Of a DNA stretch of 63,405 bases, positions 35,191 through 58,685 are shown in pieces; within the stretch, counting starts at the first letter, position 1, and each line of letters begins with the position of its first letter. Made by a program: the position numbers and the translations under genes. The notes beneath the pieces were generated by a model. That model was given only the letters and a program-made list of their open reading frames with translations. It did no database searches and was not told where the DNA came from. Source of the stretch: Klebsormidium nitens (Eukaryota; Plantae; Klebsormidiophyceae); assembly GCA_000708835.1 (NCBI GenBank), contig DF237475.1, positions 1 to 63,405 on the forward strand, written 5' to 3'.

Positions 35191-38100
35191 ATGGAGGGGT
35201 TGCGGCTGGAGGGCATAGAGGCGCACCGGCCTATGAGTGCGGACGCCCATGAAAATGGTCCAAAACCGGACAGGGTGTCCGGCTTTTTCAGCCCCCAGGT
35301 ACCCTCTAGACGTTCATCTCAGTGGGCAGCTAACAATGGTAAAGTCAGCGGACGTGAGAATCAAAGCAGTGTAGTGAGCTCCTCCCCAAAAAGGAAGAGC
35401 TCAACCGCCTGGGAAGAGAGCCAAGTGCTCTCATCCGCTCCAATGAATCAGAACAGCGATACAATGAGCAACATTAGCTCTCCAAAATCTGGGATCGCGT
35501 CTCCGAAGAGGCTCAGCATGCAGAGGTCTCAGACAATGCGCGCCTCGAAAGAATCGAGCGCCTCTAAGCATCCCGAGCGATCAGACAGTGCCGCGCAGAT
35601 GGCGCGGGAGCGGAGGGGAACTCTGGAGAGTTACAGTCCGCGTACGCAGATGGAGCTGATGGACCACCCCTTGGGGGAGCTCCTACTGCCGATTCTACCC
35701 CCCCAAGAGGGGGAAAACGGCCATGGCGGTTTGCCAGTCAGAACATCTAATGTGAAGCACTACTATGGGGTGGCGGCCAAACGGCGGTCATCTTACCAGG
35801 GGGGCGCGCCGGTAGCCCCGGTGCTGCCTGTCAAACATCCCCCCGCCCTGGCCCAGTTTCTGGAGAGCGGTGGTGCAAAGCCCAGTGAGATCCAAAGTGA
35901 GGAAGCCAATGCAGCTGCAAGTAATCAAAGGATTGCGGAGAAGATCGCAGAGCGGCGCCAATCATATGCTGGCATAGGCTTACGGGACCCAGGCAGCCCC
36001 AAGCGACAGGGCGGCCGGTTAAGCATGAAGGTTAGCTCTAACCAGCGGCGGGCAAGCGAGGCGCCCGGGGCAGACCCGTCCAGCTTTGCATTGAGAACTC
36101 CGTACCAATTGAAGCCGCGACGCGTCTGGATGCTAGAGGAGGCGTTTCGGTCGGTCCGAGAGGGGGCCGAAGCTCTGGCGTCGGAAGATTTCCCAACCGA
36201 GGGGGAGGCGCGGTGGCTGGGCGTGGGGGGAGCGGCGGAGTGGCGGCCGTGCATGGTGCTGGGGTATGACGTCAGCGAGCATAAGTACTGGGTACAGTGG
36301 CTGGCACCGCGACCCGGGGACAGCGATGCGTGTGCGCGCAGGTTCCAGGCTGCACGGATGAATGTGAGGATTGTCAACACTAGCGAGGGGGGGCACTTTT
36401 GGCAGAAGCCTAGAGAGGCAACCGGGGGGGTGGAGAGACGGCTGGGAAAGGTGGGTGATCTTGGTGAGAAGCGAGCAAGTCGTGGAGGTGCGCTGGGGCA
36501 TCGAGATGGACGGGGGATGACGGCAATACTGGCGGAGCTGGCGGAGGAGTATGTTGGGCAGTCGCACCAGCTGGCGGTTTGGGAGCAAGAAGGAGAAGCA
36601 GAAAACGGTGAGGACTTCATTACCGGTTTGCCTTGACCAATGAATCATCCACAACACAAGGGCATGTTGTCAAAACGTTGACGAACGCGACAGTTCCTCT
36701 GACGAGATTACTTTGCCGCTAAATATGTCAAACAGTTGAACGTTCTGAGTTGGAAGAACGTTCATCTACCGTAAGTGCCCAGTATGTGTTTGAAAGTTTT
36801 GAAAGTTTATGAGTTTTCTGCTGTTCATTTTCACCTTCACACATGATCTCGAAACACGGCCATCTCAATTGTCACACCCGTTTTGAGACCTCGATTTTGG
36901 AAGCGACATTTTACATCTGCAGGGGACATCTCTGAGTCGGCCCCTACAGGGCCCCGCCCCATCCCAGTGCCCACCTACTCCTACGCCGACTTTCGCGCCG
37001 CCGTCTCCAACAGGGCCTTTCTCTGCCAGCCCGCCCTGCAGCCCATGCTCCTCGAAATGAGCCACCTCCTCGAGGCCCTGTCACGGGTAGAGTTGCTCGA
37101 CAGCCGTCGGAGGGTATTGACACCAATGGAAGCGCGGGCCCACCAGAGCAAGGTGTTGAAAGACGGTGTGCGATACGTGCGGGAGCACTTGGTTGAGGAG
37201 ATGGTGGATAGCCTGGCCCTCGGGCTGGGCCGCTGGACGATGAAGATGGAGCAAGCAATTGGGGACCAGCAGTCGGCAAAGGTTCTAAGGTGAGGATCTC
37301 CTTGATAACCTGCACGTGCATCCAGCTTTGGATAAACGGCTCCGCGCGTCTTGAACTGTCCGGCATCCTGCCCAGACAAGAAGCTACTGCGGGGACGATG
37401 TCTGCTGTCTGTCTGTCAAGAGGAGCGCGGTCGACTTGTCAAAGACCCCCGCCCTGCTTAGCCCCTCGTTCCTTTTCCAGATGCTCAGGCGCAGATTTCG
37501 TTCGACCAATCAGAATGGTCGGAGCCATCCACTTTTCGTGCCTGCTGCGCTCCTTCAAGGCATGTTCCACCGATGCACGATCTCAAAACGGAGGACAAAC
37601 TCCTTTGTCAACTCTCATACAACTCCTACGGCACGTCCTTATTGCCAAGCCAACGTCGAAACATCTCCGAAACTTTTGAGCACCCCTGCCGTCTGCAGAT
37701 GGGCGAATTTGAGATTGGAAGAGGCCCTCTGCGGCGCCCTCCAGGGGACGCTCCTCCGGTACACCGAGCTCTTCCAGCATCCGCGGGGGGATCCCCCGGG
37801 GGCCCCGGTGTTCGAGGTGGGCATGTCGATGCGGGGGGACGGCCAGCTGGAGCTACAGGCGCAAACCGGGGTGCTCGCCACCTTCTCCGGTCACCTGGTG
37901 AGCCAAACGGCCTTTGAGCTCTTCTTTGGGGAGTGGACTGGGAGATGGTCTCGGAACGTTGGCAGTCAAGCAGAACGGGTTTCTGGAGCCTTCAAGTCGA
38001 CTTTCGTCCTTCGCGTGGTGTTTTTCAGATCGATGAAATGAGGAATGAGATGAGAGTTGAGAGATGAAAGATGAGAGAAGATTGCGTGTTTCTTTCCTGT

Positions 38101-41100
38101 TATCGCAGTAGATTAGTCATTGGTACTTTTACATGTACTATACCTGGAGATATGAAGGTGTCATATTCCTGAGAACATTCATGCCCCAGATTGTGCTGAC
38201 GTGAGGTTAATGAAAGTCTGCTGTTCCGCTCGCAGCTCGATGACCTGGAGGAGACTCTTCGCAACACGCCCGCCTTCAGCCCGTCCGATGATCGTTACGT
38301 CCAGGTGGGGCCAGAGAGCGATCCACTTATGTAGATCAGTCTGTGTTCAAAATCTTTGGTGACGTGACTGGGGTGGATGAACATCAGAGTGGTCTCGCAA
38401 ACGCATAAACTTGGAGAGGCCCTATGAATCCTGTAAGTTTCCATCATTGAGTCCGACTCGTGCTCCCTTGTCGTGTACGGGGAAAACGTACGGTTTCTTT
38501 TCAGTCCTCAAAGTCTCCAAGACTGTCTCACATACGCCTGCTCTTCATATCTCCTCCAAAGGTGCGCGTCCCGCACTGGTAACGCCCGCACCGGTTAACA
38601 TGTCCATTTCGAGTGTTGCAAGATCGGACCAGCAACAGGCACGCAGATCTCGTAACCGTTCGCTTCTTACCGTCCACTTCAGAAAGGGCCCAAGCTGCCC
38701 CGCCCCACGCTGGCCCGCACCGCAGCGTCCGCAATCCTCCGGACGCGCTCAGCCGTCCGCACGACCATCGACGCCGCGTCCGAGCTCCTCCGGACCGCCG
38801 CTGACCAGCTCGCACAAGAGTGGGCGTCCAAGCTGCCGGGTCACGTGGCAGCCTTCTCCGACGGCCACGCGGCAGCTTCTGGAGACGGCGAGAACGCCAC
38901 CGACAGCTCGCTGGAGAAAGTCGAGAGCCTGAAAGCGTACCTGGAGAGACTGGGAGAGGTTGAGAAAGCGGTTTTGGGATACCACGGCCGGGCCTTCGGC
39001 GAGGTGTTCGTTCTAAACTGCCGCCAGCCGCTGCACTGGCTGGCGGCCGAGCGGGCGGAGCGGCGGGAGGCCCTGTCTCGGGAGCTGTTTGAAACTCTAC
39101 ACGACTGCGTACGGCTGGTGCAGTCGCAGCTCGACCGGAACGAGGCCCTCCTGCGGACGGACCTGGATGACGTCACCCCCGAGGAGCTGTCGGAACTGGA
39201 GCGGTTCACCGGGCGCTACGACGGGACGCACGCGGGATTGCTCGCGAGCCTGCGCGAGGGCCGGGAGGCGCTGGACGCGCTCGAGAACCTGCGCGCGCCG
39301 CTGAGTCAGCATGACGTCAGCGCGCTGTGGGAGGCCGCGCGCGAGGCCGTCGCGCACGCGGAGCGGGTGTCGGACGTCCGCGGAAGGCTATGGATCGTCA
39401 AACCCGGGGTTATCGCCGGGATTAGGCGCCGGCAGGCGGAGTTACTGGAGGCGGTCAAGGAAAGAGTCGCGGCCGCCGCAGGGTTTGAGGGCTTGGAGGA
39501 TCTCGAAGCCGCGGGCGAGTACCAGGCGCAAATGGCGGCGACTTTGCGCGAGCTCTTAGAGCATCTAGAGGCGGCGAGAAAGCTGCAGGTGCAGGAAACG
39601 CTGCTGGGCATCGACCAGCTGCCCGACTGTCTGGAGCTGCTGACCCCGGCCGTCCGAAAGGTCCGATTCTGTGCGAACGTCTGGGCGCTTGCGTCCGAAT
39701 ATCTGGCGGTCCAGAGGGCGCACGAGGAGGCGCCGTTCAAGCAGATGAACGTCGGCCGGGCGCACCTGCGGGTCGCCGAGCTCGCGGACAAGATCGACGA
39801 GCTTGGGGGATCCCCCGGCGCGCGCGAGCTGGGGGGATCCCCCGCGGGCGGGGTTCTGCGGTTCCTGGAGGCGCAGGTACGCGACATTCTGCGCGAGCTG
39901 CCGGTGCTCGCGAAGCTGCGCCACCCGGGCGTGCGGCAGCGGCACTGGGAGGAACTTGGACCGGTACTCGGCGCCCGGTTCTTAGAAACCGGGCGGGACG
40001 ACCCGACGCTCGCGGCGGTGCTCGCGCTGCGGCTGTCGGAGCGCCGGGATGACGTCAGCCCGGTGCTGGAGCGCGCGATCCAGGAGTACGCGCAGGAGGT
40101 GTGCCTGGAGAAGATGGAGGAGGAGCTGCGGCGAGCGGCGGTCGAGGTCGCGCAGGGTGTGGAGCTGCGGGGTTTAGGCGACATCGAGGCGCTGCTGGGC
40201 GAGCAATTGGTCGCCATCAACTCCCTGCTGAGCAGCCCGTTCGCGAAGGCGTTCGAGGGGATGGCGCGCACGTGGCGCGAGCGGCTGGGGCATCTGCGCG
40301 CGTGCCTGGGGGAGCTGGTGCGCGCGCAGGAGGCGTTCCAAAAGCTGGAGCCGGTGTTCAGGTGAGAACCGGGCGGTATCTGTGCCCTTCATTGTAGGGG
40401 TGAGCGTCTGAAGCAGCGTCGCTTGATGGAGTGTTACCTTGCCGAAGCGAAATTGGAAAGATTCAGAGACAGACTCAGGAACGAATTTTGATGGATTGTT
40501 TTACAGAGAGAATCATCTTTGCGTGATGAAGAATGGAGCTCACTTTCGGATTTGCCCCTAGAAACAAAAAGTTTTTACTCGGTCAAATCAAACGTGTCTC
40601 GGGGTGAGAGGGACAATTTGATGAGCTTCGGTCGAAATAGATGTTGAGGCATAAAGACATAGTTAAAATAGTGGTGAAAGTTTCTGGTCACGAAGAGATG
40701 GCCACATTTCGTCGAAGAATCTGGTTCTTCTCTGTGTGGTCTTTGGATAATCGATTTGTGCGACGGATTGCTCAAGGCGTTGAGTCGTACGCTTGTCTCT
40801 TTCTCCTCCGTCTCCTCCTTTACCGCACTCGTCTCCCAGAACATTGTCCATCTTCTTGCTTGTGTCTTATTGGAGGTTTTACGTCGCGTCTTTGCTCGAA
40901 CAACGCCCCGAAACTCGCCCACTTTATTTTCAGTTTCTGTGCTCTTTCATACCTTCTGGGGCCAGCATGATTAAGCACATGCCTCTGATCCCCTCCGATT
41001 CCGTTCCAGGTCCCCTCACCTCCAGCAGCTCCTCCCCTCCGAGCACCGCCAGTTCCAATCCGTGGCTGCCACGTGGCAGGCCGTCCTGGCCCTGGCCTCC

Positions 41101-44100
41101 CAGCGCCGCTTCTTCCTCTTTCTCTGCGAGAGCACGCTCGTCACCAAAGACATTCCGGCCTGCAACCTCGCCATGGCGGACTTCCGCTCGAAGCTGACGT
41201 CAGCTCTGGACGGAAAGCGCGCCCGCTTCCCGCGGCTGCACTTCTTGACCGACGACGAGCTGGTCACGTTCGCCAGCCTGGAGCTTAACCCGACCGTTGA
41301 CCCGGGCCAAACCCTGATCTGCAAGTGCTTCCAGAGCCTGTCCTCTGTTGAGTTTAGCCAAGACCGGAAGATTGTGGCAGTTACCGGGCTCGATGGGGAG
41401 AGGGTTACGCTAACCCAGGTGGTGGGCACCAAAGACGAACCGTTGGAGAAATGGCTCGCCGCTCTAGATACGGAGATCCGAACTACCCTGAAAGCGGGGC
41501 TGGCAAAAGCAGTGGAGTATTTGGAAAGCGGAAGAGGGGCCTCATTGTCACATTTCTGCAGCATGAAGAAGGAGGACGGGATTAGTTCGACCAGTCGGAG
41601 AAGCGAACCGGGCGGTTTTGAGGAGGGGGTACCGGGTAATCTGCCGTCCCAGAGCGTGGGTTTGGCGCTACAAGTGAGCTTTACACGGCAGGTGGAAAAG
41701 GTTCTGAGCAGAGACGAAAGCGCAGACCTGAAACGTCGGGGCCTGCACTCAGAGCTGGAAAGGATGCAGGAACAAGTTGAGGATCTGCGGGCCGCTGTGG
41801 CGAAGGGACTGGGCGGGTTAGCGCGGGTTAAGGCCAAACGGCTGATCCGTTTGGGCGCCCGGTTGAGCAGGACTTTGCGACAGCTCATCGAGTGCCCGGG
41901 GAAAGATCTTCACCAGGATAGGTTTGCCTGGCAGAAGCACCTTCGGTTCTACTTTGACCCGGCTGCCCCCCGGGGTGCAGCTTGCCGGCTAGAAATGGCC
42001 GGGGCGAAACTCAGCTACGGGTTTGAGTTCATTGGGCGACAGGAAAGGGGCATCGTGACGTCAGACATGGAGCGGTGCTTTGCGGGGCTCCTGGGCGCGG
42101 TCGCAAGCGGCGGCTGCGCTCTGGTGACCGGAACTCCGGGGGCCGGAAGGGCGGAAGTGGTGCGGGCTCTCGCGGCCGCGGCGGGTAAAACCTGCCTCTT
42201 CGCGAGTTGCTCCGAGGGGATGTCGGGAGACCGGTTGAGCGGAGTGATGCGCGCGAGCATCGCGAGCGGCACGTGGTTCTGTTTGCGTGACGTTGGCGCG
42301 GTGGGCGCTGACGTGGCACAGAGCCTGAGCCAGCAGCTGGCGTCAGTAAAGCAGGCGCTGACATCATCGGGAGGGAGGGTCCAGCTGGCAGGCAGCAGCG
42401 TGCAGGTCGATCGGACGGCCGCTGTATTCTGCACAGCCCAGATCGACGGCCCTCAGCCGTCGGATCGACTTGCGGCGGCCTGCCGCGCGACGGCGCTCGG
42501 GGACGGCGCGACGGTTGCTGACGTGGCAGGTGGGCTGATGCACGCGGAAGGGTTTGAGAACTGGGAGAATTTGGGTCGGAAGCTCGCGACCGCGCTCCAG
42601 TTCGCGTCGCAGCAACTAGGGGCGCGGCACTTCGCCGCGGGGCTCCCGGCGGCGCACGCGCTGGTCGAGCGCGCGGTGCGCGCGCGAGCGGAGATGACGT
42701 CAGCAGGGTTTGGAAACGTGAGCGAGGAGGCGCTGCTGGCGGGCGTGGTGGAGAGGGGCATCGCGCCCGGCTTGCTCGGGGACGAGCTGACGTCATTCCA
42801 GCGGCTGCTGACGAATGTGTTCCCCGGCGGAGGCCGGCCGGTGGACACGAACGGCCGGCTGAAAGAGGCGGTTAGGGAAGCGGTTAGGGAGCGGGGTTTA
42901 AGCGAGGTTTCGGGGACGGTTCAAAAGTGTGTGCAGCTGCAGGAGTGTATGGCGCTGGAATGTTTGGGAACGGTCGTCTGTGGAGAGGCGGGGGCGGGAA
43001 AGACGGAGCTGATTGCTTTACTGGCGCGAGCAAGTGAAAAGCTGACGGGAACTAGAGTGACGATCGAAACCGTGGCGCTTGCTGGGGCGAGCGCGGAGCA
43101 GATTGCTGCCAGGTGCGACGACATCTTGGGCCGTCAGGATGGCGACACGTGGGTGGTGTTCGACGGTGCGATGGGCGCCGACCAGGCTGTTATCATCACC
43201 GGGCGCTTCGACCAGGACTCGCGCCTGTTTGCACTCTCCCGGGAAAAAGGCCACCGATTGAAAGTCATTTTCGAAGTCGATTCTCCAGAGGGAATACCGT
43301 CAGCGCTGCAGGGCCGGTGCGCGTTGGTCCACGTCAGCAGGGGAGAAGCAGTCGACTGGAACGCCCTTGTAAAAGCATGGGTGGAGCGAAGTTTGCCCCC
43401 AAGCTGGGCGGAAGAAGCGGCGCTTTTCAAACTCGTGTGTGAAAAGGCGCTCCCGGCTTGTCTCGAGCTAGCCATGACCGGGGCGCCTGCCAATTTGGAG
43501 CTTATTCCAACCGGGCTGGTGCAGAGCTTCTTGTCTCTGGTGGGGTTCACACTTGCGTCTTTCTATTCCGCCAACCCGTCGCAACGGCCGAAGAGCGGAA
43601 GAGAGGAAGGGCCGGAAGCGGATCAGGGCAAGGGCAGGCGGCGGCTCATCTCCTATGGGCGGAAGCAGGCACGTGACATGGTGAGCTGGCGGAGGCTGCA
43701 TCTGCATAAGGAGGGGGAGGGAAGTCTGGACAAAAGAGAAAGCGCTGTTGCGGCGTTAAAGTCCAGACTTGATGACGTCAAGCCCTCGGAGCGGGCTCAA
43801 ATGCTGACGACAGCCGCCGTTTTCGCGGCCGTCAACTCTCTCGGGCTCGCGATCGCGGGAGCGACGGAGCGCGCCGCGCTCGAGCACGTCATCCGTGACG
43901 TCATCCGCGACGTGGGTCCGAAAGAAGCACCCCCCCTGCCGGAGGAAAGCCTGTTCGAAGTCGGGTACAGCTGGCAGTTCCGGGCGTGGCGGCACTGGCC
44001 GGAGCTGCGGACGGAAAGCGCGGCCGCGGACGGAAAGGCGTCCGGAGCTCCGTCCGGCGACGTCAGGTTTTTCGTGCCCGTCCCAGAGACGGCGCGTAAC

Positions 44101-47100
44101 GAGGTGTTGGCGAAAATGGTGCTCCGCGGGGGGGGCAGAGTGGCGCTGTTCGGACCCCCCGGGTCCGGGAAGAAGTCGCTGATAGGTCACGTGATGCGGA
44201 CGGCGGCTAAGGAAGAGAGCGCGCGAGAAACTAGAGGGGGGAAGCCAGGTGGAGTCGGACAGAATCCTCAGGGAAGCAACGACTCTGCTTCTGGGCGCTC
44301 GGTTGTAACAATCGACAGTGAAGGAAGTGAGAAGCCAACAGCACGGCTTCTGCGGAATTACAGTCTTCTGCCGACGGTTCCGTACAGCTTCGACAGTCTG
44401 GTGGCCATCTTCGCGGAGCAGCTGGCGGCGGCCTGGCCGGAACGAGCGGCCGGAATGGGCGGAACGAACGAGCCCGGCCGGAGCACGCCGGGCTTGCCGG
44501 ACTCCCTCGTCCTGCGCCTGAGCCGCGCATCGACCCAACTCCACAAAACCCTCCTCCAAACCCTGCCAAACCCTCGGGAAGGTCTCGGACTCGGTACCCG
44601 CGACTTGCTTAGCCTCCTGGACGCTTTGGTTACGAATTCGGACGCCCTAAAACCGATTCCGGACGCTCTGCAGTCGGACGCGGACGCGCCAACGGCCGGG
44701 ATGGACGCGGGTACGGACGCCGACGCCGTCAAGCTGTGGGCGCACGAGGTCCGCAGGGTGTACGGCGACCGTCTGACCGGTGCGGCCGCGGTCGAGAGCG
44801 CGCTCGCGGCCGCGACTGCGGCGCACCTGCGCGAGTGGGCGCCGCTCACAGTGCAGCCCTTCATGTTCGGGCAGTACACGCGTCACTCCGACGCGAACGG
44901 TGACGTCAGGGTGCGGGTCGTTTACAAGGAGGTTATGGACAAATCGGGGTGGGTTTTGGGGATGGAGGGCCAGTTAGCCGCCCACAACATGGAGAATAGC
45001 GATCCGCTCCCGATCGTTCTCTTCCCGGAAGCGGCGGAACACTTGTCCCGGTTGCTGAGGGCGCTTAGAGGTTCCGGCTCCCAGGCACTGCTGATAGGGC
45101 CCCCGAGAAGCGGGAAGAGGTCCCTGCTGCGGCTGGCGGCCTTCGTTCTGGGCTTCGACCGGTTTGAGGTCGGCGAGAAGAACGGAGAAGTGCCCGGGGA
45201 ATGGAGGGAGGAAATGGGGAAGGCGGTGGAGAGGGCGGCGTTGGGTGACCGGGGCGTGGTGCTCGGGGTGAAGGCGGGGCAGCCGGGCCTGATGGATGAC
45301 GTGGCGCAACTGCGGAGGGGGCTTGAGGTGCGCTTCTGATGTCATGTTTTTTGCAAATTTTGTTGGTTGATAAGTTGTTGGAGGCAGCTATCTTTGCACT
45401 GGTTGAAAAAAGCTGTTGGCGGCACTTGCATTACCACATCAATTCTTCTGCAGGATCAGGACCATTCTCGCAACCAACGAAACGAGGCCGACCCTTTTTG
45501 CTGTCTCGAAAAGGCTAAATATCAATCTATTTAAAAAGCTTAAGCTCACCGAAAGTGTCCGTACTCGAGATCCTTGACTTCAGTTGGTGATTTTCTACTA
45601 TAGCTGCCTGTCCTTATTGCTCCAAATCCTGCTGATATCCAACCTGCCGACCTCCTTATAAGAAGCTGTATAAAAATTTGGCACGCCTAATCGATGCCCA
45701 AACACGTAATAAGGTACCATCAAACAGAAGAGTAAATAGAAGAAACCTTTGGATCTCTGTTCTTTCCAACTTGCGAATCAAAGGCTTTCCTCACCCGTTA
45801 CTCATTCGTCTCCTTTCTTCAGGTGCTTTCTCTCCTGTCCCCCGAACGCCGCTACTTCATCCAGCAAGAACAGCAGCGCCTGGAAGAGTCCTCCAGCACC
45901 TCTCTAGTTTCCCTCATCGACAGCGCGCAAGAGCGCGAGGCCTACTTCAACGCGCGCCTCGTCGAGCGCGTCAACGCCAACCTCCGGATCGCCGTCCGCG
46001 CGGCCGCGCGCTCCCCCGCGCTCGCGCACATCCTGACGGAGTGCCGCCCCTTCGCGGACGCGTGCTCGGTCGACCGCTTCGACGCCTTCTCGGACGCCGC
46101 CCTGGCCTCGATCGCACGCGCGCACTTCGACAAGCACGAGGAGCTGCAGCGCTTCGTCGAGTTCGCGGCCGTCGAGCGGGGCGCGCTCGCAACCGCGGCC
46201 GCGGCGGTACACGCGCGAGCGCGCGGGCCGGGCGTCGCGAGCTACCAGGAGCTGCTGCGCGCGTTCAGCGCGCTGTTACTCGACCGCGGGGGCGCGTTCT
46301 GGGCAACACTCCAGCGGCTGACCGTCGGCGCTGCGAAATTACGGTCGACCGCGCGTTTGGTCGCCGAGATGCAAAGCGATTTAGAGGCGCTGCTGGGGCG
46401 GCGGGACTCGACCGAGGAAGAGATGGAGCGCCTCATCGGCTCGATCGCGCGAGAGCAGGACGCGCTCGACGCGAGCCGCGCGGCGCTGCAGGTCGAGCAG
46501 GAGAAGGCGGAGCGCGAGAGCGCGGCCGCGGCGCGCGCGGCGGCGGACGCGCAGCAGGACGTCGACTCCGTCGTTCCGCTGGTCAGCCAGGCAATTAAGG
46601 AGCTGAGCAGCCTCAACAAGAAGGACATCGCCGAGATGAAAAGTTTGGCGAAGCCCCCGCCTCGTCTGATGATCGTTCTAGAAGCGCTGTGTATTCTGCT
46701 CGGAAGGGCGCCCAAGAGGCCACGTGTCAGCCAGCCGGGGCGCGGCGCGCCGGAGGCCGGGGAAGGGTACTGGCCCGTGGCGCGCGAGCTGCTCGCGCAG
46801 GTCAACTTCGTGCAGATGCTGCTGAGCTTCGACAAGGACGAGATGGATGCGGACACGGTCCGGCGGTGAGTTGATTGAGAGTCTCTGCGTAAAAAGGTCT
46901 CTTTCTGAAAGGAAAAGGTACAAAAATCATTTTTTGAGAGTACAAAAGTTCAGGATGAAGAAGGATTTCTGTGGTAAGACCTTTGAGTAAGAGGTTCGAC
47001 GCAAAGGGTTTTTGAGTAAGAGCAGGTTTAGTACGCAGTTTCTGACTAGGAATTTTCCTAGCAACAGATTCGGAGTCTTTGCGTCGATGCTCTTTCAGAA

Positions 47101-50100
47101 GTAAGCAACTCAGCATTTCGTCTCACTCCGCACCAGAAGCGCCTCTAAAGTTCTGAAAGTACCGAATGCGCGCCGAGACATGTCTTTAGGTATCAAGCAT
47201 GGCAGAACAGTTGTCGAATCTTGAAGCACTTTCCTTGCAGATTGCGGCCATACATCGAGAACCCGGACTTTGCCCCGGACCACGTGGGCCGCATCAGCGT
47301 GGCGTGCAAGAGCATCTGCATCTGGGTGCGCGCCATGTACAGCTACCACGTGGCCAAGGTCACCAAGATGGCGCCACGTGTCGAGCGGCTGCGCGAGGTG
47401 ACGTCCGACCTCGAGAACGCGCGGGCCGCGCTCGAGCGGCGCAAGGTCGAGCTCAGCGAGATGGAGGAGAAGATCTCGCACTTGAGAAGCCGATACGAAA
47501 ACGCGCGAGGCGCGAAAAACAGTCTGGTACAACAAGCGGAAGAGTCGGAGGTCAAAGTGGAGCGCGCGCAGCGGCTGATCGGGCGGCTCGAGGGGGAGTG
47601 CGCGCGCTGGGAGAAGTGCGCGGGGGAGCTGCGCGAGAAGTGGCGCGGGGTCGTCGGCGACGCGCTGCTCGCGGCGGGACACGTGGCGTACCTGGGGCGC
47701 GTCCCCCGGAAGCTTAGAGAGTCGCAGATCGCGGAGTGGCAGGAGGCGCTCCGGAATATCCGCTTGCCGTTCTCGCAGGGTTTCTCGCTCTTAGGTTTCT
47801 GTGTGGACCAGCAGACGGTTCAGGAGTGGGTTGCGGCGGGCTTGCCGAACGACCGTCAGTCTCTGGAGAACGCGGTTATGGTTAAGTACGCGCAGCGGTG
47901 GGTCAAGGTCGCTGACCCGCAGAACCAGGCGGCCGCGTGGCTGGGGCGGCGGGACAACGGACGGAGTCCGGCGTGGTTGGCAGCGGAATCCGCGGAGCTG
48001 GCCGCGGCTTTGGAGGAGGCCTTGCAAAAGGGGCGGGGCGTAGTCGTGAGTGTGGAGAAAACGGGGGACAGCGAGCTGCTACGGTCGATTGTGCGCTCGA
48101 ACGGGGCCTCTCAGGAAGAGGGGGAAAGTGGGTTGTGCGTCATGCACGTGAAGAATGAGAAAATGGCCGCGCAATGCCTGAGGGAGGTGAGATATGACGG
48201 CTTGCGTTTCTTGTTGATAATTTGCGTGAAGTCAGAAAGACTTTTCTGTGTGCCTTTGTAATGCTGGTGAAATCGGCCTGTTGTGCGACTTCGACAAATC
48301 TGCGTCGAGAAACTCGGACCTCGCTTAAGCAATGTAAGGCCCAGGGAGAATTTCAGCAGCATAGTCCGGCAGGCTCCGAGGAAAAGTTGAAGACTACTGG
48401 AGATGCAAATGGCTGTCCAGGACATTGAGACGGCCAAAGTTACTCGGACATCTACTTAGAGCAACCACTTGAATCAGTTCAGCCCACACCGCGAGTTCAT
48501 ACATCTATTGCTTTCTTGGCAGGACAACATGGACGCCAATTGCGTCGACTTCTCCATAACGAACGACGGCGTCTACAGCCAGCTTCTGGCCCTCGGTGAG
48601 TTCCTGCCCTTGAACTTTTGAAACGGCTGCCGTGCTGCAGTGAAGAACCGCTTCACTCCCCTCGTTTGCAAACGTGTGAGAGCGCCTGACGAGGCGGCCT
48701 ATCAATCTCGTCTCCAGGTTAAATGTCTCGTCTCTCACCAGCTGACCCCATGCCGTTCACTGGTTTCAAAGTTCGTGTCCAAAAGCACTAAAATCTCTCG
48801 GCCGCAACCGATGGACGAGACTTGCCCTTTTGCGTCCCCACATATGTCCGGTATCTGCCTTTCTGCGCGCCTGCCATCCGACCTTTCCGAGCTGGCCCTA
48901 AACCTTTTCTCCCTTTACCCCTTCAGCCTCCTCATTCTTAGCCCCTCGATTTTATTCCCCTTTATTTCCAAGTCTTCTTACTCCTAACCCTAAATGTCCA
49001 AACCCGCAGTGGTGGAGAAGGAGCGGCCCGACCTGGAGGAGCAGCGGCGCGGGCTGGTGCAGTCGCACGCGGCGCTGGAGCGGCAGCTGGCGGCCGCGGA
49101 GGAGCGGCTGCTGGCCCTGGTGTCCGGCGCGTCCGGAACCATCCTGGACGACGCCGCGCTCGAGGACGCGCTCACGGCAGCGTCCGGGACGTACGAAAAC
49201 ATCCAGGTGAGCGGACTGCTGTCTTTTGGAAAAATCCGCGGAAGGAGAAGTGCAGGAGTCGACATTCTTATGACGAAGTTGTCTACAAGTCCATAGGGGA
49301 GGAGTCGGGCACGTACGTTCTTTTCTAGTCGCACGTGCGGGGCGTCGGTGCTTTTCTTCCTCATGTGGACGGCACCATTTCGAGAATAAATAGGACGAAA
49401 GGAGAATCTTATGTCATGTTGTTCGTCTGCAGCTGTAAATTCCGTCCTAAATTTTCCTTCACCGAGGCCGCCGTTCTAATCAACGCTTTCTTTTGAGTCA
49501 ACCAGATGCTTTATGAATATTCTATGACCGCTTTCTTTCCTAGTTTGCTCTTGATTTCGAATTCAGAGCTGGAACAACGGTACTGCGCGCGCGCTTATTT
49601 TATGGGTTCCCCCCTCCGCAGGGCCGCATTTCCCGGGTGGCGGCCAACGAGGGCGAGCTGGAGGCGACGCGCGACCGGTACCGGCCCGTCGCGGAGCGCG
49701 GCACGCTGCTGTTTGCCACCATTAGGGACCTCGCTAAGGTGCGCTCGTTCTCCGTCCTGCCCAAATTTTCCTTCAACGGAACGCTTCCAAGACTACCTTC
49801 TCAGTCTCTACGGGAGCTGCGACGAACAGCAGGGTCAAAGTCCCGACGTCTCTTCTTATCTGCTCTTGTTTTCCGGCGCAGGTAAGGTCCAGCTTATCTG
49901 TGGGCGAAGAAATTCACTGATTTCTTGCGTCCCGCTTTTGGGACGCCAGCTGCAAACCGAGCCGACGAATAGCTGACCCTTTTGCAGCGAAAAGAGTCCA
50001 CCTTAAGTTCCCTTTATGAAGATTCGCTTCTCCTTGCATTCCCCATTTTAGATCACCAGCTGATCAGCTAAACTGACGGATAGTTATCCCTTTTTAAGAG

Positions 50101-53100
50101 AGCCCATCTCACAGCTTAAGTTCATCAAACCCAATTTTGACTCGCCTTCAGCTTTTCATGGGCAGCTGATGAGCTCAAACCCACGAAACATACGCCATTT
50201 TCATCTCCAGTGCGGCCCCCTATACGGCCGCCGGTTGGGCTGGTTCAAGCAGCTGTACGCGCGCGGCATGCAACGGACGTCCGCGCTGAGCCCGGTGGAG
50301 GTGTCCGAGCGGCTGACCTACCTCACGCGCCAGATGACGTCAGTCGTCTTCTGCACCGTGGCCGGCACGCTGTTCGCGGAGCACCGGGCGCTCTTCGCCC
50401 TCGTCCTGACCGCCAGGTGAGAGTTTCGGACGCGTTCGGACGTGTAAAGGATGAAAAGCCGCCAAGGCTTGCCTGATTGCGAACATATGAAGCGGATGAG
50501 TACTTGTCTCCTTGCAACCATATCAGACGGTTAACCGGGAGGTCTTATGAGCTTCCTTGTAGTTTCTTCCTACTTATGGGGAGTAGACTACGCACACCGT
50601 TGGATCGTTCACAAAGCTGACAGAATCTTCTGTTGGCAGCCTGAAGTCCAAACAATCGACCATATATCCGACGTATCTTTGTCAGGATCCTGGAAGCTCG
50701 GGGCGACCTCTCTGCGGAAGAATGGGGCGCGTTCGTCGCCGGCCCGGGCCAAAGTACCCTGGTGGACCAGCCGCCTTTGTTTTTAGCCGACAAGCAGGAG
50801 AAGTGGTCGGCGCTTCTGGATCTGGAGAGTCGCCTCGACTGGTGAGAACACTTACATCGCAATTGACAGGAAGGAAGTACCCACTTGATTTTGGCACGAA
50901 GACTGCCTGATCTTATACTTCCATTGGTATCACAGCCTCCATTTCTTCCCACACCTTGCAACGACCTATTGGGCGGCCGCCTCGCTGATTGGTCCTTTGA
51001 ATTGGACCCGTAACGGTGACGAAACAAAGGGCCATTCCCCAGAGCTTTACTCCCCTTACTTAATTTCCCGAAAACTTTGTATCTGAAGCCGCGCTTTCTC
51101 CGCCGCCGCCTCCTGCAGTTTCTCGGGGTTGTCCACCGACGTGCGCCGCAACGCCCCCGCGTGGCAGGCGTTGTTCGAACGTGAGGGCGCCCCGGACGCC
51201 CAGCTCCCGGACCCCTGGGCGTCCGAATCGAGCCTCTTCCAGAAGCTGGTCCTCACCCGGTTCCTGTGGCCCGACCAGGTAAGGCCCAGTTTAAACACTG
51301 TAACTATCTGAAACGATCTCAAGCATCAAACCAAGTAATGAGACAATGGATAATCCATGCTTTCTTGCGAACAATCGCATGTCTCGTCGGAGGCAACCCA
51401 TTCCGGTCGGAGTCAGCTGAGTAGGAGGTTGAGAGCAGAGAAGGAAAGAATCAAACAAGCTCTGCCCCCGCTTAAACGGTTGATTCTACGGACTGGAGGA
51501 GAGACTCCTCTCCACTTCTCTGTAGCTGTTGCTGCGAACTTAAGCCAGTCAGGTTATTCCTGCAGGAAGGCGTCAGAATCTGTCCTCGTTGCAGAGAATT
51601 GTCCTGTGTCATTACCACGCTTCGCAGTCGGGTAACGCCACCGGGGTACTATGAACTAGGTATTGTACTCATCCTCTGGGTTTCAGTGCCCAATTGCACG
51701 GCTAGTGCTCCTGCAGAATTCGCAATTTGACGAGTCGTACCTTTTTGACTCGCAGGTCGTTTCCGCGGCGGAGCGGTGCGCGTACGCCGTCCTCGAGATC
51801 GACGCCGCCGCGGCCGCGGCGCGGCCGACGGTAGCCGCGGCCGCGGAGCAGGCCGACCGGCTGACGCCCATCCTGTGCGCGTGCGCGCCGGGCGCGGATC
51901 CGCTCGTGGAGGTAAGCCGGAGTTATACTTTCCGTCCACCCTTTGTCGAAAGGACTTTTGACTATGAGTCGAAAATATGATATGATTTTTGTGCAGAGAG
52001 AAACATTTGAACAGAGCTACTGATTGGAAGGATTCTGCTACAAACAAGCGTCACGAAAAGGTGGACATGTTTGGTGTTTGGTGGAAGTTAAGGAAGCCGT
52101 CCCGTTTGAGAGTCTTGCAGTCGATAGGTGTCTCGATGCTGGATGCACGGTCAAGCTCGTTATACATTCTTTTGTACAGCCGGACTTTTAGACTACAGGG
52201 AATCCTTTGCAGCCCCGTTGAATCTCAAGACACCGTTGTGCAGATCTCGGAGTTCGCGCGCAAGAAGAGCATGAGCAAGCGCATGTGGGCGGTGTCGCTC
52301 GCGGAGGCCGGCCAGTGCGAGCGCGCGCTCGAGGGCATCGCCGACGCCGCCAAGTGGGGCAAGTGAGTGCCCACGTCAGCATGGCGTCATATCTGCGAGC
52401 CCTCTCTGTCATCGCGTCTGTATACCTCATTGCGGAACCGACGGCCTTGAGGCTTTCCCGGAGCCTTAGAGGAGACAAATAAAGCGCCTGCCATGCAGTC
52501 TCAACTTAAACGGCTCCCGGGCTTCGCTTCCGTACGATTGTCAGTTGAGGTCTTGGAATACATCCTTTGCTGGCAGCAAGAGCTTGGCCTTTCATCACCT
52601 GAAGCAGGACACAAACGTCTGGGCGCGCGTTGAAGCCAAGTTCTACAGGCTAAGAATCAGATTGCAACCAAGCAATTATTCGAGGTTAGTGCTGAGAAAG
52701 AGTGCATTTTTGTCTTCGAGACGGCAACGACACAAACAGAGGTTCCTACTCCTTTTCCAGGTGGGTAGTGCTCCAGGACTGCCACGCGGCAGGCCCATGG
52801 TTGGCCACGTTGCAGGGCGCCCTGGAGGGCCTGAAAGGCAACCCAAACGTGCACGACAACTTCCGGGTTTGGCTCACCACCGCGGCCGCGGCGGACTTTC
52901 CGCCGGAGCGGCTGCACGGCAGGTGAGAAGCAACGGAATTGTGGAAAGAGCAAGCCAATAAGCAAAGACGAACCCTCCTAAAAATAGTAGAACTCACAAA
53001 GACCCATTGTGTAGCAACTTGCAATTGCTGCTTTGATCTTTCATACGCATTTTGGTATGTTTGGGTCCTGAAAAAATGAACTGGGCACAGCGGTCTTTGG

Positions 53101-56100: not shown

Positions 56101-56321
56101 GCGAAGGCGACCACCCGACGCCTGTCTTGGTGCGCGTGGTCGCCCTGCCGAGGACGGATTATGGGCTTGAAGCGGACAGAACGTATCTGTGTCCGGTTCA
56201 CATTGTCTCTGCGGAAGGGCGCAAGGTGCTCGGCTGGACCCGGTTGCGGTCGGGGCAACGCCCTGAGGGCTGGTGGGAGAAGCGCCAGGTGGCAGTTGTA
56301 TGTCGGAGCGCGTGGTGCTGA
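35191..56321 (+). CDS. DHC: Divergent axonemal (inner-arm, DNAH1-like) dynein heavy chain, 22 exons, about 4300 aa, with degenerate AAA1
   Basis: Exons 35191-36607, 36923-37289, 37699-37897, 38236-38304, 38683-40361, 41010-45327, 45823-46865, 47241-48186, 48523-48595, 49010-49206, 49622-49738, 50211-50416, 50686-50841, 51119-51278, 51756-51911, 52244-52362, 52761-52922, 53298-53480, 53880-54265, 54635-54867, 55186-55485 and 55905-56321. All introns are GT-AG and the exons total 12903 nt with no internal stop. Landmarks: LRHPGVRQRHW, KLEPVF, KRARFPRLHFLTDDEL, four P-loop positions, stalk and MTBD (KDIAEMKSLAKPP), ERPDLEEQR, WVVLQDCH, EPPQGVR, YGGRLAD and C-terminal WWEKRQVAVVC. Confidence 0.93.
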
Positions 56322-57938: not shown

Positions 57939-58685
57939 ATGTCGGTCAACGTCAGGAAGCCGCAGCAGCCAGGAAGGGGGCCAGTACGCAGCTGTAGCTT
58001 TATGCACGTGGCTGTAGGAAGAAGGTTTTTACGACTGTGTTTAGCAGCGATACAGGCGAAGACAGGTGTGCCTGAGCACATGATTGGCGATGATGTCGGA
58101 GAAGCAGACATCCCTGGCGTTCAGATGCGCGGCCGTACGATCACCAAAAAACCAGACTGTGTGCTCCATGTTAATCGCTACCTGCGACAGAATTTCCCAA
58201 AGCCTGTCCATCAAATGGACAATGATGACCTGTTGGAGGTCTTAGAGAGCGGGCCGACCGTCTTCATCTCAGAAACAGCACTCCATAACGAACCTAATAT
58301 TGACTATGTGAAAGAGGAGGCGGAGGCCACTGAAGCTGTGTTTGATCAACCAACAGTAAACATTCTGGCAGCTGGCAAGGTTTACGTCAGCAAAGGGTAT
58401 AAGAGGGTGACAAAACACATGTTCGCTGTCAAAGTACGCAGGGCCGTGATGCAACGGAGCTGGCTTAGTTGGCAGCAGTGGGACCTGCAGCAGTGCAACG
58501 CACGCGGAACGCCTGGTTACCGGTTCGACTTCATCACAGAGCAACTTGTTGGCAACACAGAGCTACATCCTGGTTTGAGCAACCATCTGCAGGACAATTT
58601 GTCTGTCGATGTATGGTCTTTAAAGCTCCACTGCGAAGGAAGGGCCAAGAGGGAAAGAGATCATCCGTGGAAAAAGCCTTACTAG
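57939..58685 (+). CDS. Hypothetical protein, possibly PD-(D/E)xK nuclease-like
   Basis: A 248-aa ORF with protein-like composition from about 58055 (cag|GCGAAG), containing KKPDCVL...GPTVFISETAL. The fold call is weak inference. Confidence 0.5.
   Translation: MSVNVRKPQQPGRGPVRSCSFMHVAVGRRFLRLCLAAIQAKTGVPEHMIGDDVGEADIPGVQMRGRTITKKPDCVLHVNRYLRQNFPKPVHQMDNDDLLEVLESGPTVFISETALHNEPNIDYVKEEAEATEAVFDQPTVNILAAGKVYVSKGYKRVTKHMFAVKVRRAVMQRSWLSWQQWDLQQCNARGTPGYRFDFITEQLVGNTELHPGLSNHLQDNLSVDVWSLKLHCEGRAKRERDHPWKKPY

What the first reader, a model, noticed from the sequence alone, without database searches (positions are those of the whole stretch)
42121..47349. Full-length dynein heavy chain with a dead AAA1 site but intact stalk and microtubule-binding domain: candidate pseudo-motor
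AAA1 is the essential hydrolytic site of dyneins, with canonical motifs GPAGTGKT, CFDEFNR and FITMNPGYAGR. Here Walker A is GTPGAGRAE (42130-42156; Lys and Thr lost), Walker B is WFCLRDVG (42274-42297; DE lost) and sensor I is FCTAQ (Asn lost). AAA2 keeps GEAGAGKT (42982-43005), AAA3 has GPPGSGKK and AAA4 has GPPRSGKR. The coiled-coil stalk and MTBD (46591-47349: KDIAEMKSLAKPPP...LLSFDKD...PYIENPDF...SICIWVRAMYSY) are well conserved. The 22-exon, roughly 4300-codon frame has no stop or frameshift, which argues against a pseudogene. The inference is a non-motile axonemal microtubule cross-linker, brake or scaffold, analogous to divergent animal DNHD1. I know of no such description in green plants.
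Basis: partly seen in the sequence, partly recalled or inferred. Interest (0 to 1): 0.85.

Follow-up and report, generated by a model that had tools for sequence, protein, structure and literature searches.

The report
Catalytically dead inner-arm-type dynein heavy chain
This is an intact, transcribed and selectively maintained dynein heavy chain gene of a green (streptophyte) alga that has lost every catalytic residue of its main ATP site yet keeps a canonical microtubule-binding stalk, so it most likely works as a non-motor microtubule tether.

Summary
A 22-exon, 4348-codon gene (35191-56321, + strand, all introns GT-AG, no stop) encodes a full dynein heavy chain. In AAA1 the Walker A is GTPGAGRAE, the Walker B is CLRDVG, and the sensor I Asn and sensor II Arg are gone.

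It is not a pseudogene. Three orthologous loci (86% and 61% identity) keep the frame, the intron positions and the same dead motifs. dN/dS is 0.19 in AAA1 and 0.044 in stalk+MTBD. RNA-like contigs cover exons only and carry a spliced junction.

Only 40% of canonical-invariant AAA1 positions survive, against 90% in stalk+MTBD. Coiled-coil lengths are identical to those of working dyneins.

[quoted passage not shown] A degenerate holozoan heavy chain falls far away; no DNHD1 sequence was available to test. AAA1 motifs are intact in Cymbomonas and decay in different ways in the streptophytes.

The clade probably corresponds to the published orphan DHC12, but I could not test that. Non-motile dyneins (DNAHX, DNHD1) were described in 2025. 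This one is independent and differs in design: the nucleotide site is lost and microtubule binding is kept. The proposed tether or brake role is inference. The scan also noted a dead-AAA1 dynein on another piece of this genome; I did not examine it.

The parts
35191..56321 (+). Whole gene: 22 exons, 4348 codons, ATG at 35191, stop at 56319-56321
   Evidence: Model built. All 21 introns are GT-AG. Exon borders coincide with tblastn HSP borders in three orthologous loci. Conservation with L006 ends at 56312.
35191..36607 (+). Exon 1, N-terminal tail (aa 1-473); contains the W-PC-V-GYD...Y-VQW motif shared with IAD3/IAD4 tails
   Evidence: The start Met is invariant in four orthologues. hhalign gives a 27-residue match to IAD4 and IAD3 tail profiles at E about 5e-5, and none to IAD5 tails.
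36923..37289 (+). Exon 2 (tail)
37699..37897 (+). Exon 3 (tail)
38236..38304 (+). Exon 4 (tail)
   Evidence: The splice-site scores are weak here, so these borders are the least certain.
38683..40361 (+). Exon 5: end of tail and first half of linker (DHC_N2)
   Evidence: Pfam DHC_N2 9e-30
41010..45327 (+). Exon 6 (aa 1244-2683): rest of linker, AAA1, AAA2, AAA3 and start of AAA4
   Evidence: Pfam AAA_6 4.5e-43, DHC_N2, AAA_8. The AF2 model of aa 1560-2250 has pLDDT 80.8, and all its top PDB matches are dynein AAA1-AAA2.
42130..42156 (+). AAA1 Walker A remnant GTPGAGRAE (Lys to Arg, Thr to Ala)
   Evidence: G..G.GRAE is invariant in four orthologues. The DNA contig of run X1 agrees with no differences.
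42274..42297 (+). AAA1 Walker B remnant WFCLRDVG (Asp to Arg, Glu to Asp)
   Evidence: CLRDVG is invariant in four orthologues. It is covered by an RNA-like contig of X5 with no differences.
42982..43005 (+). AAA2 P-loop GEAGAGKT, retained
   Evidence: GEAG[AT]GK[TS] in all four
44152..44175 (+). AAA3 P-loop GPPGSGKK (Lys kept, Thr/Ser lost), followed by a low-complexity stretch where the canonical DD.N.P Walker B should align
45097..45120 (+). AAA4 P-loop GPPRSGKR
   Evidence: The canonical axonemal form is G.GGSGK[QS]S.
45328..45822 (+). Intron 6, shown to be spliced out
   Evidence: A contig of run X6 joins 45327 to 45823, GT..AG
45823..46865 (+). Exon 7: AAA4 small domain, stalk CC1 and first half of the MTBD
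   Evidence: Pfam MT; 83% identity to the 61% orthologue
46866..47240 (+). Intron 7, inside the MTBD; absent from orthologues L001 and L004
   Evidence: The loose end of an X6 contig at 47240 carries the last 16 bases of exon 7. L001 and L004 have one uninterrupted 687/697-aa ORF here.
47241..48186 (+). Exon 8: second half of the MTBD, stalk CC2 and start of AAA5
   Evidence: Pfam MT 1.3e-23, AAA_9. Anchor spacings equal those of canonical dyneins.
46591..47349 (+). MTBD core with an inner-arm-type flap (39 residues between the PP and W anchors)
   Evidence: The AF2 model of the orthologue's stalk/MTBD has pLDDT 94.4 with a beta-hairpin flap. Its match to the human inner-arm dynein d stalk/MTBD crystal structure 8i3j has TM 0.87 and rmsd 2.7.
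48478..54265 (+). Exons 9-19 (48478-48595, 49010-49206, 49622-49738, 50211-50416, 50686-50841, 51119-51278, 51717-51911, 52244-52362, 52761-52922, 53298-53480, 53820-54265): AAA5, AAA6
   Evidence: AAA_lid_11
54635..56321 (+). Exons 20-22 (54635-54867, 55186-55485, 55905-56321): C-terminal domain and stop
   Evidence: Pfam Dynein_C 1.7e-6; conserved with L006 up to 56312

Best explanation
[quoted passage not shown] Shown here:
- AAA1 has lost the Walker A Lys/Thr, the Walker B Asp/Glu, the sensor I Asn and the sensor II Arg.
- The AAA1-AAA4 half of the ring keeps only 40-58% of the positions that are invariant in working dyneins.
- The linker (79%) and especially the stalk and MTBD (90%, with identical coiled-coil lengths and an inner-arm flap) are kept.
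- The gene is transcribed, spliced and under purifying selection, strongest on the stalk/MTBD.

Inferred:
- Without Mg-ATP turnover at AAA1 the protein cannot run the dynein cycle. It is held in one state, most likely apo-like with high microtubule affinity.
- It would be anchored by its inner-arm-like tail and would bind the neighbouring microtubule through the stalk.
- It would then act as a passive, load-bearing tether, brake or placeholder in the flagellar axoneme of the motile cells.
- AAA2, whose P-loop is invariant, probably still holds a structural nucleotide.
For: Motifs and domain order.

Rarity: only this protein and its orthologue, among 148 hits, lack the AAA1 Lys.

Conservation of the dead motifs: they are unchanged in four taxa down to 61% identity, at dS about 0.9.

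Intactness: 22 exons with no stop, and intron positions shared with the orthologues.

Selection: omega (dN/dS) is 0.20 overall, 0.19 in AAA1 (CI 0.12-0.28) and 0.044 in stalk+MTBD (CI 0.018-0.078).

Expression: exon-only coverage and a GT-AG junction in RNA-like contigs. Transcripts are held by one study only, out of about nine. That fits a gene used at a particular stage.

Retention of canonical-invariant positions, by domain: AAA1 0.40, AAA2 0.42, AAA3 0.58, AAA4 0.48, stalk+MTBD 0.90, linker 0.79.

Stalk geometry: anchor spacings of 83, 26, 74, 4 and 36 residues are identical to 14 canonical dyneins, and the flap is 39 residues as in IAD3/IAD4.

Structure predictions: AAA1-AAA2 has pLDDT 80.8 and a dynein fold. 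The stalk/MTBD has pLDDT 94.4 and matches inner-arm dynein d (8i3j) best, at TM 0.87.

Phylogeny: the green orphan clade has SH-aLRT 100 in two trees, one of them built only from the non-degenerate domains.

Established knowledge (mine, not tested here): AAA1 Walker A and Walker B mutations abolish dynein motility, and nucleotide-free AAA1 corresponds to the strong microtubule-binding state.
Against: - There is no protein-level, localisation or biochemical evidence.
- The conditions of the one study that holds the transcript are unknown.
- Lys-to-Arg P-loop mutants of other ATPases can still bind nucleotide (my knowledge). AAA1 could therefore be locked in a nucleotide-like state with weak microtubule binding rather than an apo-like one.
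- The AF2 AAA1-AAA2 model is somewhat closer to closed ATP-type dynein states (TM 0.70-0.72) than to microtubule-bound apo (0.63) or post-powerstroke (0.59) structures. This is weak evidence.
- The first 650 residues of the tail share only a 27-residue motif with inner-arm tails, so axonemal docking is weakly supported.
- A permanently strong cross-bridge would hinder sliding unless it is rare or releases under load.
- Overall omega of 0.2-0.3 indicates constraint, but I had no canonical dynein from the same genomes as a control.
Confidence: 0.55

Rival explanations
1. It is a non-motile 'template' or chaperone heavy chain, like the one proposed for sea-urchin DNAHX. It would pair with other heavy chains in an inhibited phi-like particle for preassembly or intraflagellar transport, and would not sit in the axoneme as a tether.
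For: DNAHX shows that a heavy chain with a degenerate AAA1 can have such a role (PMC11785096). The AF2 AAA1-AAA2 model resembles closed/phi-type states slightly better than apo states. Expression is low and condition-specific.
Against: DNAHX has stalk and MTBD insertions that disrupt microtubule binding. Here the stalk and MTBD are the most constrained part (omega 0.044), have no indels in the coiled coil, and match a working inner-arm MTBD. DNAHX keeps ATP bound at AAA1, whereas here the P-loop Lys and Thr are both gone.
Confidence: 0.15
2. It is a microtubule anchor outside the axoneme, for example on flagellar roots, the multilayered structure or cytoplasmic microtubules of streptophyte cells. 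The dynein scaffold would be reused as a static linker.
For: The N-terminal 650 residues have almost no similarity to known axonemal tails. The transcript is present in cultures of one study whose state is unknown. Green plants lack cytoplasmic dynein 1 (PMC9237703).
Against: The motor domain groups with axonemal inner-arm dyneins and carries their MTBD flap. About 20 other RNA-like runs hold next to none of the transcript, which argues against a housekeeping role. The probable homologue DHC12 is found in Chlamydomonas axonemes (PMC7608865, PMC3432765).
Confidence: 0.15
3. It is still a motor. ATP would be bound and hydrolysed non-canonically at AAA1 (Arg replacing Lys), or another site (AAA3/AAA4) would drive the cycle.
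For: The strictly preserved stalk length and register, the linker, and the ERW motif at the stalk base are what a mechanically coupled motor needs. Gly-Lys is kept in the P-loops of AAA2, AAA3 and AAA4.
Against: Four independent catalytic elements of AAA1 are gone. AAA3 lacks the P-loop hydroxyl residue and has a low-complexity stretch in place of its core. No dynein is known to move without AAA1 hydrolysis (established knowledge).
Confidence: 0.07
4. It is a relic on its way to becoming a pseudogene, and the transcripts are noise.
For: Omega (0.2-0.3) is probably higher than in canonical dyneins. AAA3 is the least constrained domain (0.32). Different members of the clade have lost different AAA1 residues.
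Against: The 4348-codon frame is intact in the window and unbroken over the 96-99% of it recovered in two orthologues, and over the stretches recovered in a third. There are 21 conserved GT-AG introns. Omega is significantly below 1 in every domain (upper CI at most 0.47). The dead motifs themselves are invariant, and correct splicing was observed.
Confidence: 0.05

Closest known systems
Chlamydomonas DHC12/PCR4 'orphan' minor inner-arm dynein and its reported orthologues in Chara, Klebsormidium, Marchantia and Anthoceros (PMC9237703, PMC5100056, PMC3432765, PMC7608865)
   Same: Both are orphan heavy chains outside the nine canonical classes, restricted to the green lineage, with single-headed inner-arm affinities. 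According to Kollmar the DHC12 tail resembles the DHC8/IAD4 class. My clade contains a Chara braunii protein, and its taxon range fits the published one.
   Different: Orthology to CrDHC12 was not testable, because no CrDHC12 sequence could be retrieved. None of the papers I could read mentions the state of the ATPase motifs, and Kollmar states they were not analysed. The chlorophyte member of my clade (Cymbomonas) still has intact AAA1 motifs.
Single-headed inner-arm dyneins IAD3/IAD4 (human DNAH7/DNAH1, Chlamydomonas DHC2 = dynein d)
   Same: This is the nearest canonical group in both trees. They share the same stalk lengths, an MTBD flap of similar length, and a short N-terminal tail motif. 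The best structural match of the stalk/MTBD is human dynein d (8i3j).
   Different: The gene lies outside both classes, at about 23-28% identity. AAA1 to AAA4 are degenerate. Most of the tail is unrelated.
DNAHX, the non-motile heavy chain of sea-urchin sperm (PMC11785096, preprint 2025)
   Same: Both are full-length heavy chains with a non-conserved AAA1, kept by selection as non-motors.
   Different: DNAHX derives from the outer-arm alpha chain and is found only in animals. It still binds ATP at AAA1 and is locked pre-powerstroke, and its stalk/MTBD is disrupted by insertions. Here the origin is inner-arm-like and green. The P-loop Lys and Thr are lost, and the stalk/MTBD is the best conserved part.
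DNHD1 (Kollmar class 11, metazoan 'orphan')
   Same: Both are divergent heavy chains whose AAA1 lacks the catalytic Walker B residues (stated in PMC11785096). DNHD1 was once thought a ghost gene and is now linked to flagellar function.
   Different: It is an analogy only. DNHD1 is reported as metazoan-specific. No DNHD1 sequence appeared among my hits, so kinship was not tested directly. A degenerate holozoan heavy chain (Chromosphaera, P0111) falls on the outer-arm side of the tree, far from this clade.
Engineered AAA1 Walker A/B mutants of cytoplasmic dynein (my knowledge, not from a tool)
   Same: Loss of ATP binding or hydrolysis at AAA1 gives a non-motile head that binds microtubules tightly. 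This is the behaviour predicted here.
   Different: Those are laboratory point mutants. Here the state is natural and old, and it comes with wide remodelling of AAA1-AAA4.

Membership tests
Dynein heavy chain superfamily | Linker (DHC_N2) followed by six AAA+ modules, with a coiled-coil stalk and MTBD between AAA4 and AAA5, and a C-terminal domain | tested here: met
   Pfam DHC_N2, AAA_6, AAA_8, MT, AAA_9, AAA_lid_11 and Dynein_C occur in order. PDB phmmer hits are all dyneins. The AF2 folds match dynein.
Dynein heavy chain superfamily | Catalytic AAA1 (GPAGTGKT, DE, sensor I Asn, sensor II Arg) | tested here: not met
   The window has GTPGAGRAE, RD, Gln/Asp and Pro. 146 of 148 hits keep the Lys.
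Single-headed inner-arm dyneins IAD3/IAD4 (DHC7/DHC8 classes) | Placement inside the class in a motor-domain tree | tested here: not met
   It is sister to IAD3+IAD4 and lies in neither. Clades were labelled through PDB matches.
Single-headed inner-arm dyneins IAD3/IAD4 (DHC7/DHC8 classes) | MTBD with the H2-H3 flap insert | tested here: met
   The spacing is 39 residues, against 34-36 in IAD3/IAD4 and 21-27 in other classes. A beta-hairpin appears in the AF2 model. The match to 8i3j has TM 0.87.
Single-headed inner-arm dyneins IAD3/IAD4 (DHC7/DHC8 classes) | Homologous N-terminal tail | tested here: inconclusive
   Only a 27-residue motif matches, with hhalign probability 67-68% and E about 5e-5. 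BLAST similarity to any hit begins near aa 626-850.
DHC12/PCR4 orphan group of Viridiplantae | Orthology to Chlamydomonas DHC12 | not testable with these tools
   No CrDHC12 sequence was retrievable. No fetched protein starts with its published N-terminus MEPQD. Word-index searches with clade members found only canonical dyneins.
DHC12/PCR4 orphan group of Viridiplantae | Taxon range: green algae, charophytes and some bryophytes | tested here: met
   The clade holds Cymbomonas, Mesostigma, Chlorokybus, Chara and the window lineage. The literature range is given in PMC9237703.
DNAHX non-motile subfamily | Descent from the outer-arm alpha chain; stalk/MTBD insertions; ATP retained at AAA1 | tested here: not met
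   The gene is on the inner-arm side of the tree. The coiled coil has no indel. The P-loop Lys and Thr are lost.
DNHD1 (class 11) | Monophyly with metazoan DNHD1 | not tested
   No DNHD1 sequence was among the 150 best representatives. Kollmar reports class 11 as metazoan-specific.
Pseudogene | Stops or frameshifts, omega near 1, no correct transcript | tested here: not met

The most novel reading that the evidence does not exclude
This would be a third, independent origin of a non-motile dynein heavy chain, with the reverse design to DNAHX. The nucleotide pocket of AAA1 is abolished, while the linker, ring scaffold, stalk register and flap-bearing MTBD are kept under strong selection. The result would be a naturally 'rigor-locked' inner-arm dynein that serves as a load-bearing or tension-sensing cross-bridge between doublets.

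Within one orthologous clade the AAA1 site goes from intact (Cymbomonas) through single Walker B losses (Mesostigma, Chlorokybus) to complete loss (this lineage). If real, that would document stepwise conversion of a motor into a structural protein during streptophyte flagellar simplification.
Probability: 0.35. Interest if true: 0.7.

Novelty: new variant of a known kind. Interest (0 to 1): 0.62.

Why it matters
Dyneins are defined by ATP-driven movement, and naturally dead ones have only just been recognised in animals (DNAHX, DNHD1).

A green-lineage example that keeps a canonical stalk and MTBD but has no AAA1 site would show two things. Pseudo-motors arose repeatedly, and they can follow opposite designs. 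It would also offer a natural probe of what the dynein ring, linker and stalk do when uncoupled from hydrolysis.

It gives a concrete hypothesis for the long-unexplained orphan DHC12-type dyneins of green algae and early land plants. It also adds a datable series of motif losses to the story of flagellar reduction on the way to land plants.

Tried and rejected
- **Pseudogene:** rejected.
- **Sequencing or assembly error at the motifs:** rejected. Three orthologues carry the identical motifs, and an independent Logan DNA contig has no differences.
- **Long-branch artefact as the cause of the green clade:** tested with a second tree from the linker, stalk/MTBD and AAA5 only. The same clade is recovered at 100, while the second Mesostigma protein (P0084) moved, so its place is unreliable.
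- **Finding more orthologues in JGI metagenome contigs:** 599 pattern matches, none related. That collection evidently lacks the samples that hold P0001, so the blank says nothing.
- **Retrieving full-length clade members and CrDHC12 with the search for homologous proteins on Chlorokybus and Cymbomonas regions:** only canonical IAD3/IAD4 proteins of Scenedesmus and unrelated dyneins came back. This reflects a word-index limit and is not evidence of absence.
- **ESM Atlas search:** only generic dynein clusters.
- **Supplements of Kollmar 2016 and Lucas & Geisler 2022:** not held.
- **One broad literature query:** wasted. A targeted one found no description of degenerate AAA1 in green-lineage dyneins.
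- **AAA4 Walker B:** I make no claim, because the alignment there is ambiguous.
- **Read laying:** given 5951 letters.

Full report
**Observation**

The stretch 42121-47349 lies inside a long + strand gene. Translation of 42001-45340 is open and contains GTPGAGRAE (42130-42156), WFCLRDVG (42274-42297), FCTAQ, GEAGAGKT (42982-43005), GPPGSGKK (44152-44175) and GPPRSGKR (45097-45120).

Pfam finds DHC_N2, AAA_6 (4.5e-43), AAA_8, MT and AAA_9 on the large exons, and AAA_lid_11 and Dynein_C on the last ones. A phmmer search of the PDB returns only dyneins, best the Chlamydomonas inner-arm chains of 8glv at E-64. It aligns GTPGAGRA with GPAGTGKT, CLRDVG with CFDEFN and FCTAQ with FITMN.

**Gene model**

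I used tblastx conservation with orthologous loci and a splice-site search to build the model. It has 22 exons, 13047 nt and 4348 codons, runs from the ATG at 35191 to the stop at 56319-56321, has only GT-AG introns and has no internal stop.

The exon borders coincide with the borders of tblastn matches in three other loci, so intron positions are shared. The borders of the small exon 4 are the least certain.

**Relatives**

A full HMMER scan of 1.84 billion representatives with AAA1-AAA4 found one close cluster (64% identity). Everything else was at 30% identity or less. The 90%-clustered collection gave three relatives of the big exon:
- P0156, 86% identity, from a Logan assembly
- P0001 and P0157, both 61% identity, from two JGI metagenomes

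Their contigs are collinear with the window. All four proteins have G..G.GRAE and W.CLRDVG unchanged. They also share GEAG[AT]GK[TS] in AAA2, GP[PG]GSGK[KA] in AAA3 and GPPRSGKR in AAA4. Among 148 hits aligned over AAA1, only this protein and its orthologue lack the Walker A Lys.

**Not a pseudogene**

Nei-Gojobori estimates against the 86% orthologue (dS 0.31), with bootstrap intervals:

| Region | omega (dN/dS) | 95% CI |
|---|---|---|
| All | 0.20 | not computed |
| AAA1 | 0.19 | 0.12-0.28 |
| AAA3 | 0.32 | 0.23-0.47 |
| Stalk+MTBD | 0.044 | 0.018-0.078 |

Against the 61% orthologue (dS 0.9), omega is 0.27 overall and 0.15 in the stalk.

Contigs of three RNA-like runs from one study cover exons but not the two introns in the laid stretch. 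One contig joins 45327 to 45823 across a GT..AG intron. Another carries the end of exon 7 directly before 47241. A DNA run agrees with the window at the Walker motifs.

Five runs of that single study hold the transcript, and about 20 runs of eight other studies hold next to none. That suggests stage- or condition-specific expression. The library types are guesses of the tool, so the spliced junction is the real evidence for RNA.

**How far the decay goes**

I took the 286 columns that are at least 90% invariant in 66 canonical dyneins. The window protein keeps the following fractions:

| Domain | Fraction kept |
|---|---|
| Linker | 0.79 |
| AAA1 | 0.40 |
| AAA2 | 0.42 |
| AAA3 | 0.58 |
| AAA4 | 0.48 |
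| Stalk+MTBD | 0.90 |
| AAA5 | 0.74 |
| AAA6 + C-terminus | 0.61 |

In AAA1 the changes are Lys1624Arg, Thr1625Ala, Asp1670Arg and Glu1671Asp. The sensor I Asn is Gln or Asp depending on the alignment, and the sensor II Arg1790 is Pro. In AAA3 the hydroxyl residue after the P-loop Lys is lost. The canonical DD.N.P Walker B is not alignable, because a low-complexity stretch follows the P-loop. A possible remnant, VVTIDSEG, exists. I make no claim about the AAA4 Walker B.

The conserved Arg of the AAA2 'ATVSR' motif is kept.

**Stalk and MTBD**

The spacings between conserved anchors (83, 26, 74, 4 and 36 residues) are identical in the window clade and in 14 canonical dyneins. All conserved MTBD residues and the ERW motif at the stalk base are present. 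The insert between the PP and W anchors is 39 residues, against 34-36 in IAD3/IAD4 and 21-27 elsewhere. This is the inner-arm flap.

One orthologue has no intron in the MTBD, so its stalk/MTBD could be folded by reference. The AF2 model has pLDDT 94.4, two long helices and a beta-hairpin flap. Its best compact match is the crystal structure of the human inner-arm dynein d stalk/MTBD, 8i3j (TM 0.87, rmsd 2.7 Å).

AAA1-AAA2 of the window folds with pLDDT 80.8 into the dynein arrangement. So the ring scaffold is kept although the site is dead.

**Phylogenetic place**

An LG+C20 tree of 43 motor domains (2200 columns) puts the window lineage with Chara braunii GBG69585. Next come Chlorokybus and one Mesostigma protein, then Cymbomonas, in a clade with SH-aLRT 100. 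The clade is sister to IAD3+IAD4.

A second tree from the linker, stalk/MTBD and AAA5 only (1147 columns) recovers the same clade at 100. The branching order matches the species phylogeny. That argues for orthology and against long-branch attraction.

The window organism is therefore a streptophyte alga branching near Chara. Klebsormidiophyceae is my guess from the roughly 100-Mb DNA contig set and the literature, and is not shown.

Within the clade the AAA1 motifs are:
- Cymbomonas: GPECTGKTE / DEFD, intact
- Mesostigma: GPHGAGKSE / KEFD
- Chlorokybus: GPGGCGKTE / DGLH
- Window lineage: G..G.GRAE / RDVG

The Chara model lacks the AAA1 P-loop region but is near-canonical in AAA2-AAA4.

A degenerate holozoan heavy chain (Chromosphaera) falls with the outer-arm and cytoplasmic dynein side of the tree, far from this clade.

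**Literature**

- Kollmar 2016 lists orphan dyneins, including Chlamydomonas DHC12/pcr4 (tail like DHC8) and a Klebsormidium one. The paper states that the ATP sites were not analysed.
- Lucas and Geisler 2022 report DHC12 orthologues in Chara, Klebsormidium, Marchantia and Anthoceros, with unknown function.
- CrDHC12 is a low-abundance axonemal dynein that depends on p28.
- Chai et al. 2025 describe DNAHX, an outer-arm-derived non-motile heavy chain of animals. It has ATP trapped at AAA1 and a disrupted stalk/MTBD. They also note that DNHD1 lacks the catalytic Walker B residues.
- I found no paper that describes loss of the AAA1 motifs in a green-lineage dynein.

I could not obtain a CrDHC12 or DNHD1 sequence, so both relationships remain untested here.

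**Mechanism**

Shown: the catalytic elements are lost, the fold, linker, stalk and MTBD are kept, and the gene is expressed and constrained.

Inferred from the established dynein cycle: without Mg-ATP turnover at AAA1 the protein cannot step, and it sits in one conformational state. Selection is strongest on the microtubule-binding end and the stalk length is exact. The most economical reading is therefore a static or load-responsive tether. It would be anchored by an inner-arm-like tail and would bind the adjacent microtubule, probably in the axoneme of motile cells.

Which state it is locked in (apo-like with tight binding, or nucleotide-like with weak binding) cannot be decided from sequence. 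The tail evidence for axonemal docking is thin: a 27-residue motif shared with IAD3/IAD4 tails.

**Verdict**

The pseudo-motor reading is well supported at the level of 'cannot be a canonical motor, yet is maintained'. The specific role is open.

The family is probably the known orphan DHC12 group, and non-motile dyneins now have a precedent. This is therefore a new variant of a known kind and not a new category. It is still an unusually clean natural case.

The scan has a similar first-reader note on another piece of this genome (s1-344160), which I could not examine.

Noticed in passing
window 36267-50342 (12 sites in dynein exons); also 950, 16257, 20234: The palindromic octamer TGACGTCA (CRE/bZIP-type) occurs 15 times against 0.85 expected, and 12 of these are in exons of this gene. 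A synonymous-codon shuffle of the CDS gives a mean of 0.34 and a maximum of 3. The 86% orthologue L003 also has 12, while the 61% orthologues have 2-3. The octamer occurs in two reading registers (xTS as NTG ACG TCA, xDV as NNT GAC GTC A). I have no explanation.
   Followed up: partly
window 46866-47240 versus L001:15050-17113 and L004:14292-16385: The intron that splits the MTBD in the window (and in L003) is absent from the two 61% orthologues, which have one uninterrupted 687/697-aa ORF. This is an intron gain or loss within the lineage.
   Followed up: partly
window 41010-45327 (runs X5-X8, X25 versus X12-X32): Transcript-derived contigs of this gene are held by five runs of one 2024 study. 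About 20 RNA-like runs of eight other studies of the same organism, some of equal size, hold next to none. Expression looks condition-specific.
   Followed up: no
another piece of the same genome (note s1-344160): An earlier first-reader note reports a dynein heavy chain with a dead AAA1 Walker A and B elsewhere in this genome. It may be a paralogue or a second copy of this gene.
   Followed up: no
P0048 and P0084 (Mesostigma viride), P0022 (Chlorokybus): Early streptophyte algae carry very long divergent heavy chains (5878 and 6203 aa in Mesostigma) with altered AAA1 Walker B motifs (KEFD, SLFN; DGLH in Chlorokybus). P0084 changes place between the two trees, so its affinity is unresolved.
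   Followed up: partly
window 33027-34355 (- strand) and 57939-58685 (+ strand): Two long ORFs flank the dynein gene (442 and 248 aa) and have no Pfam match. I did not examine them further.
   Followed up: no
window 44190-44330: A low-complexity, Gly/Ser/Glu-rich stretch lies directly after the AAA3 P-loop. It is poorly conserved among the orthologues and sits where the AAA3 core strands and Walker B should be.
   Followed up: partly
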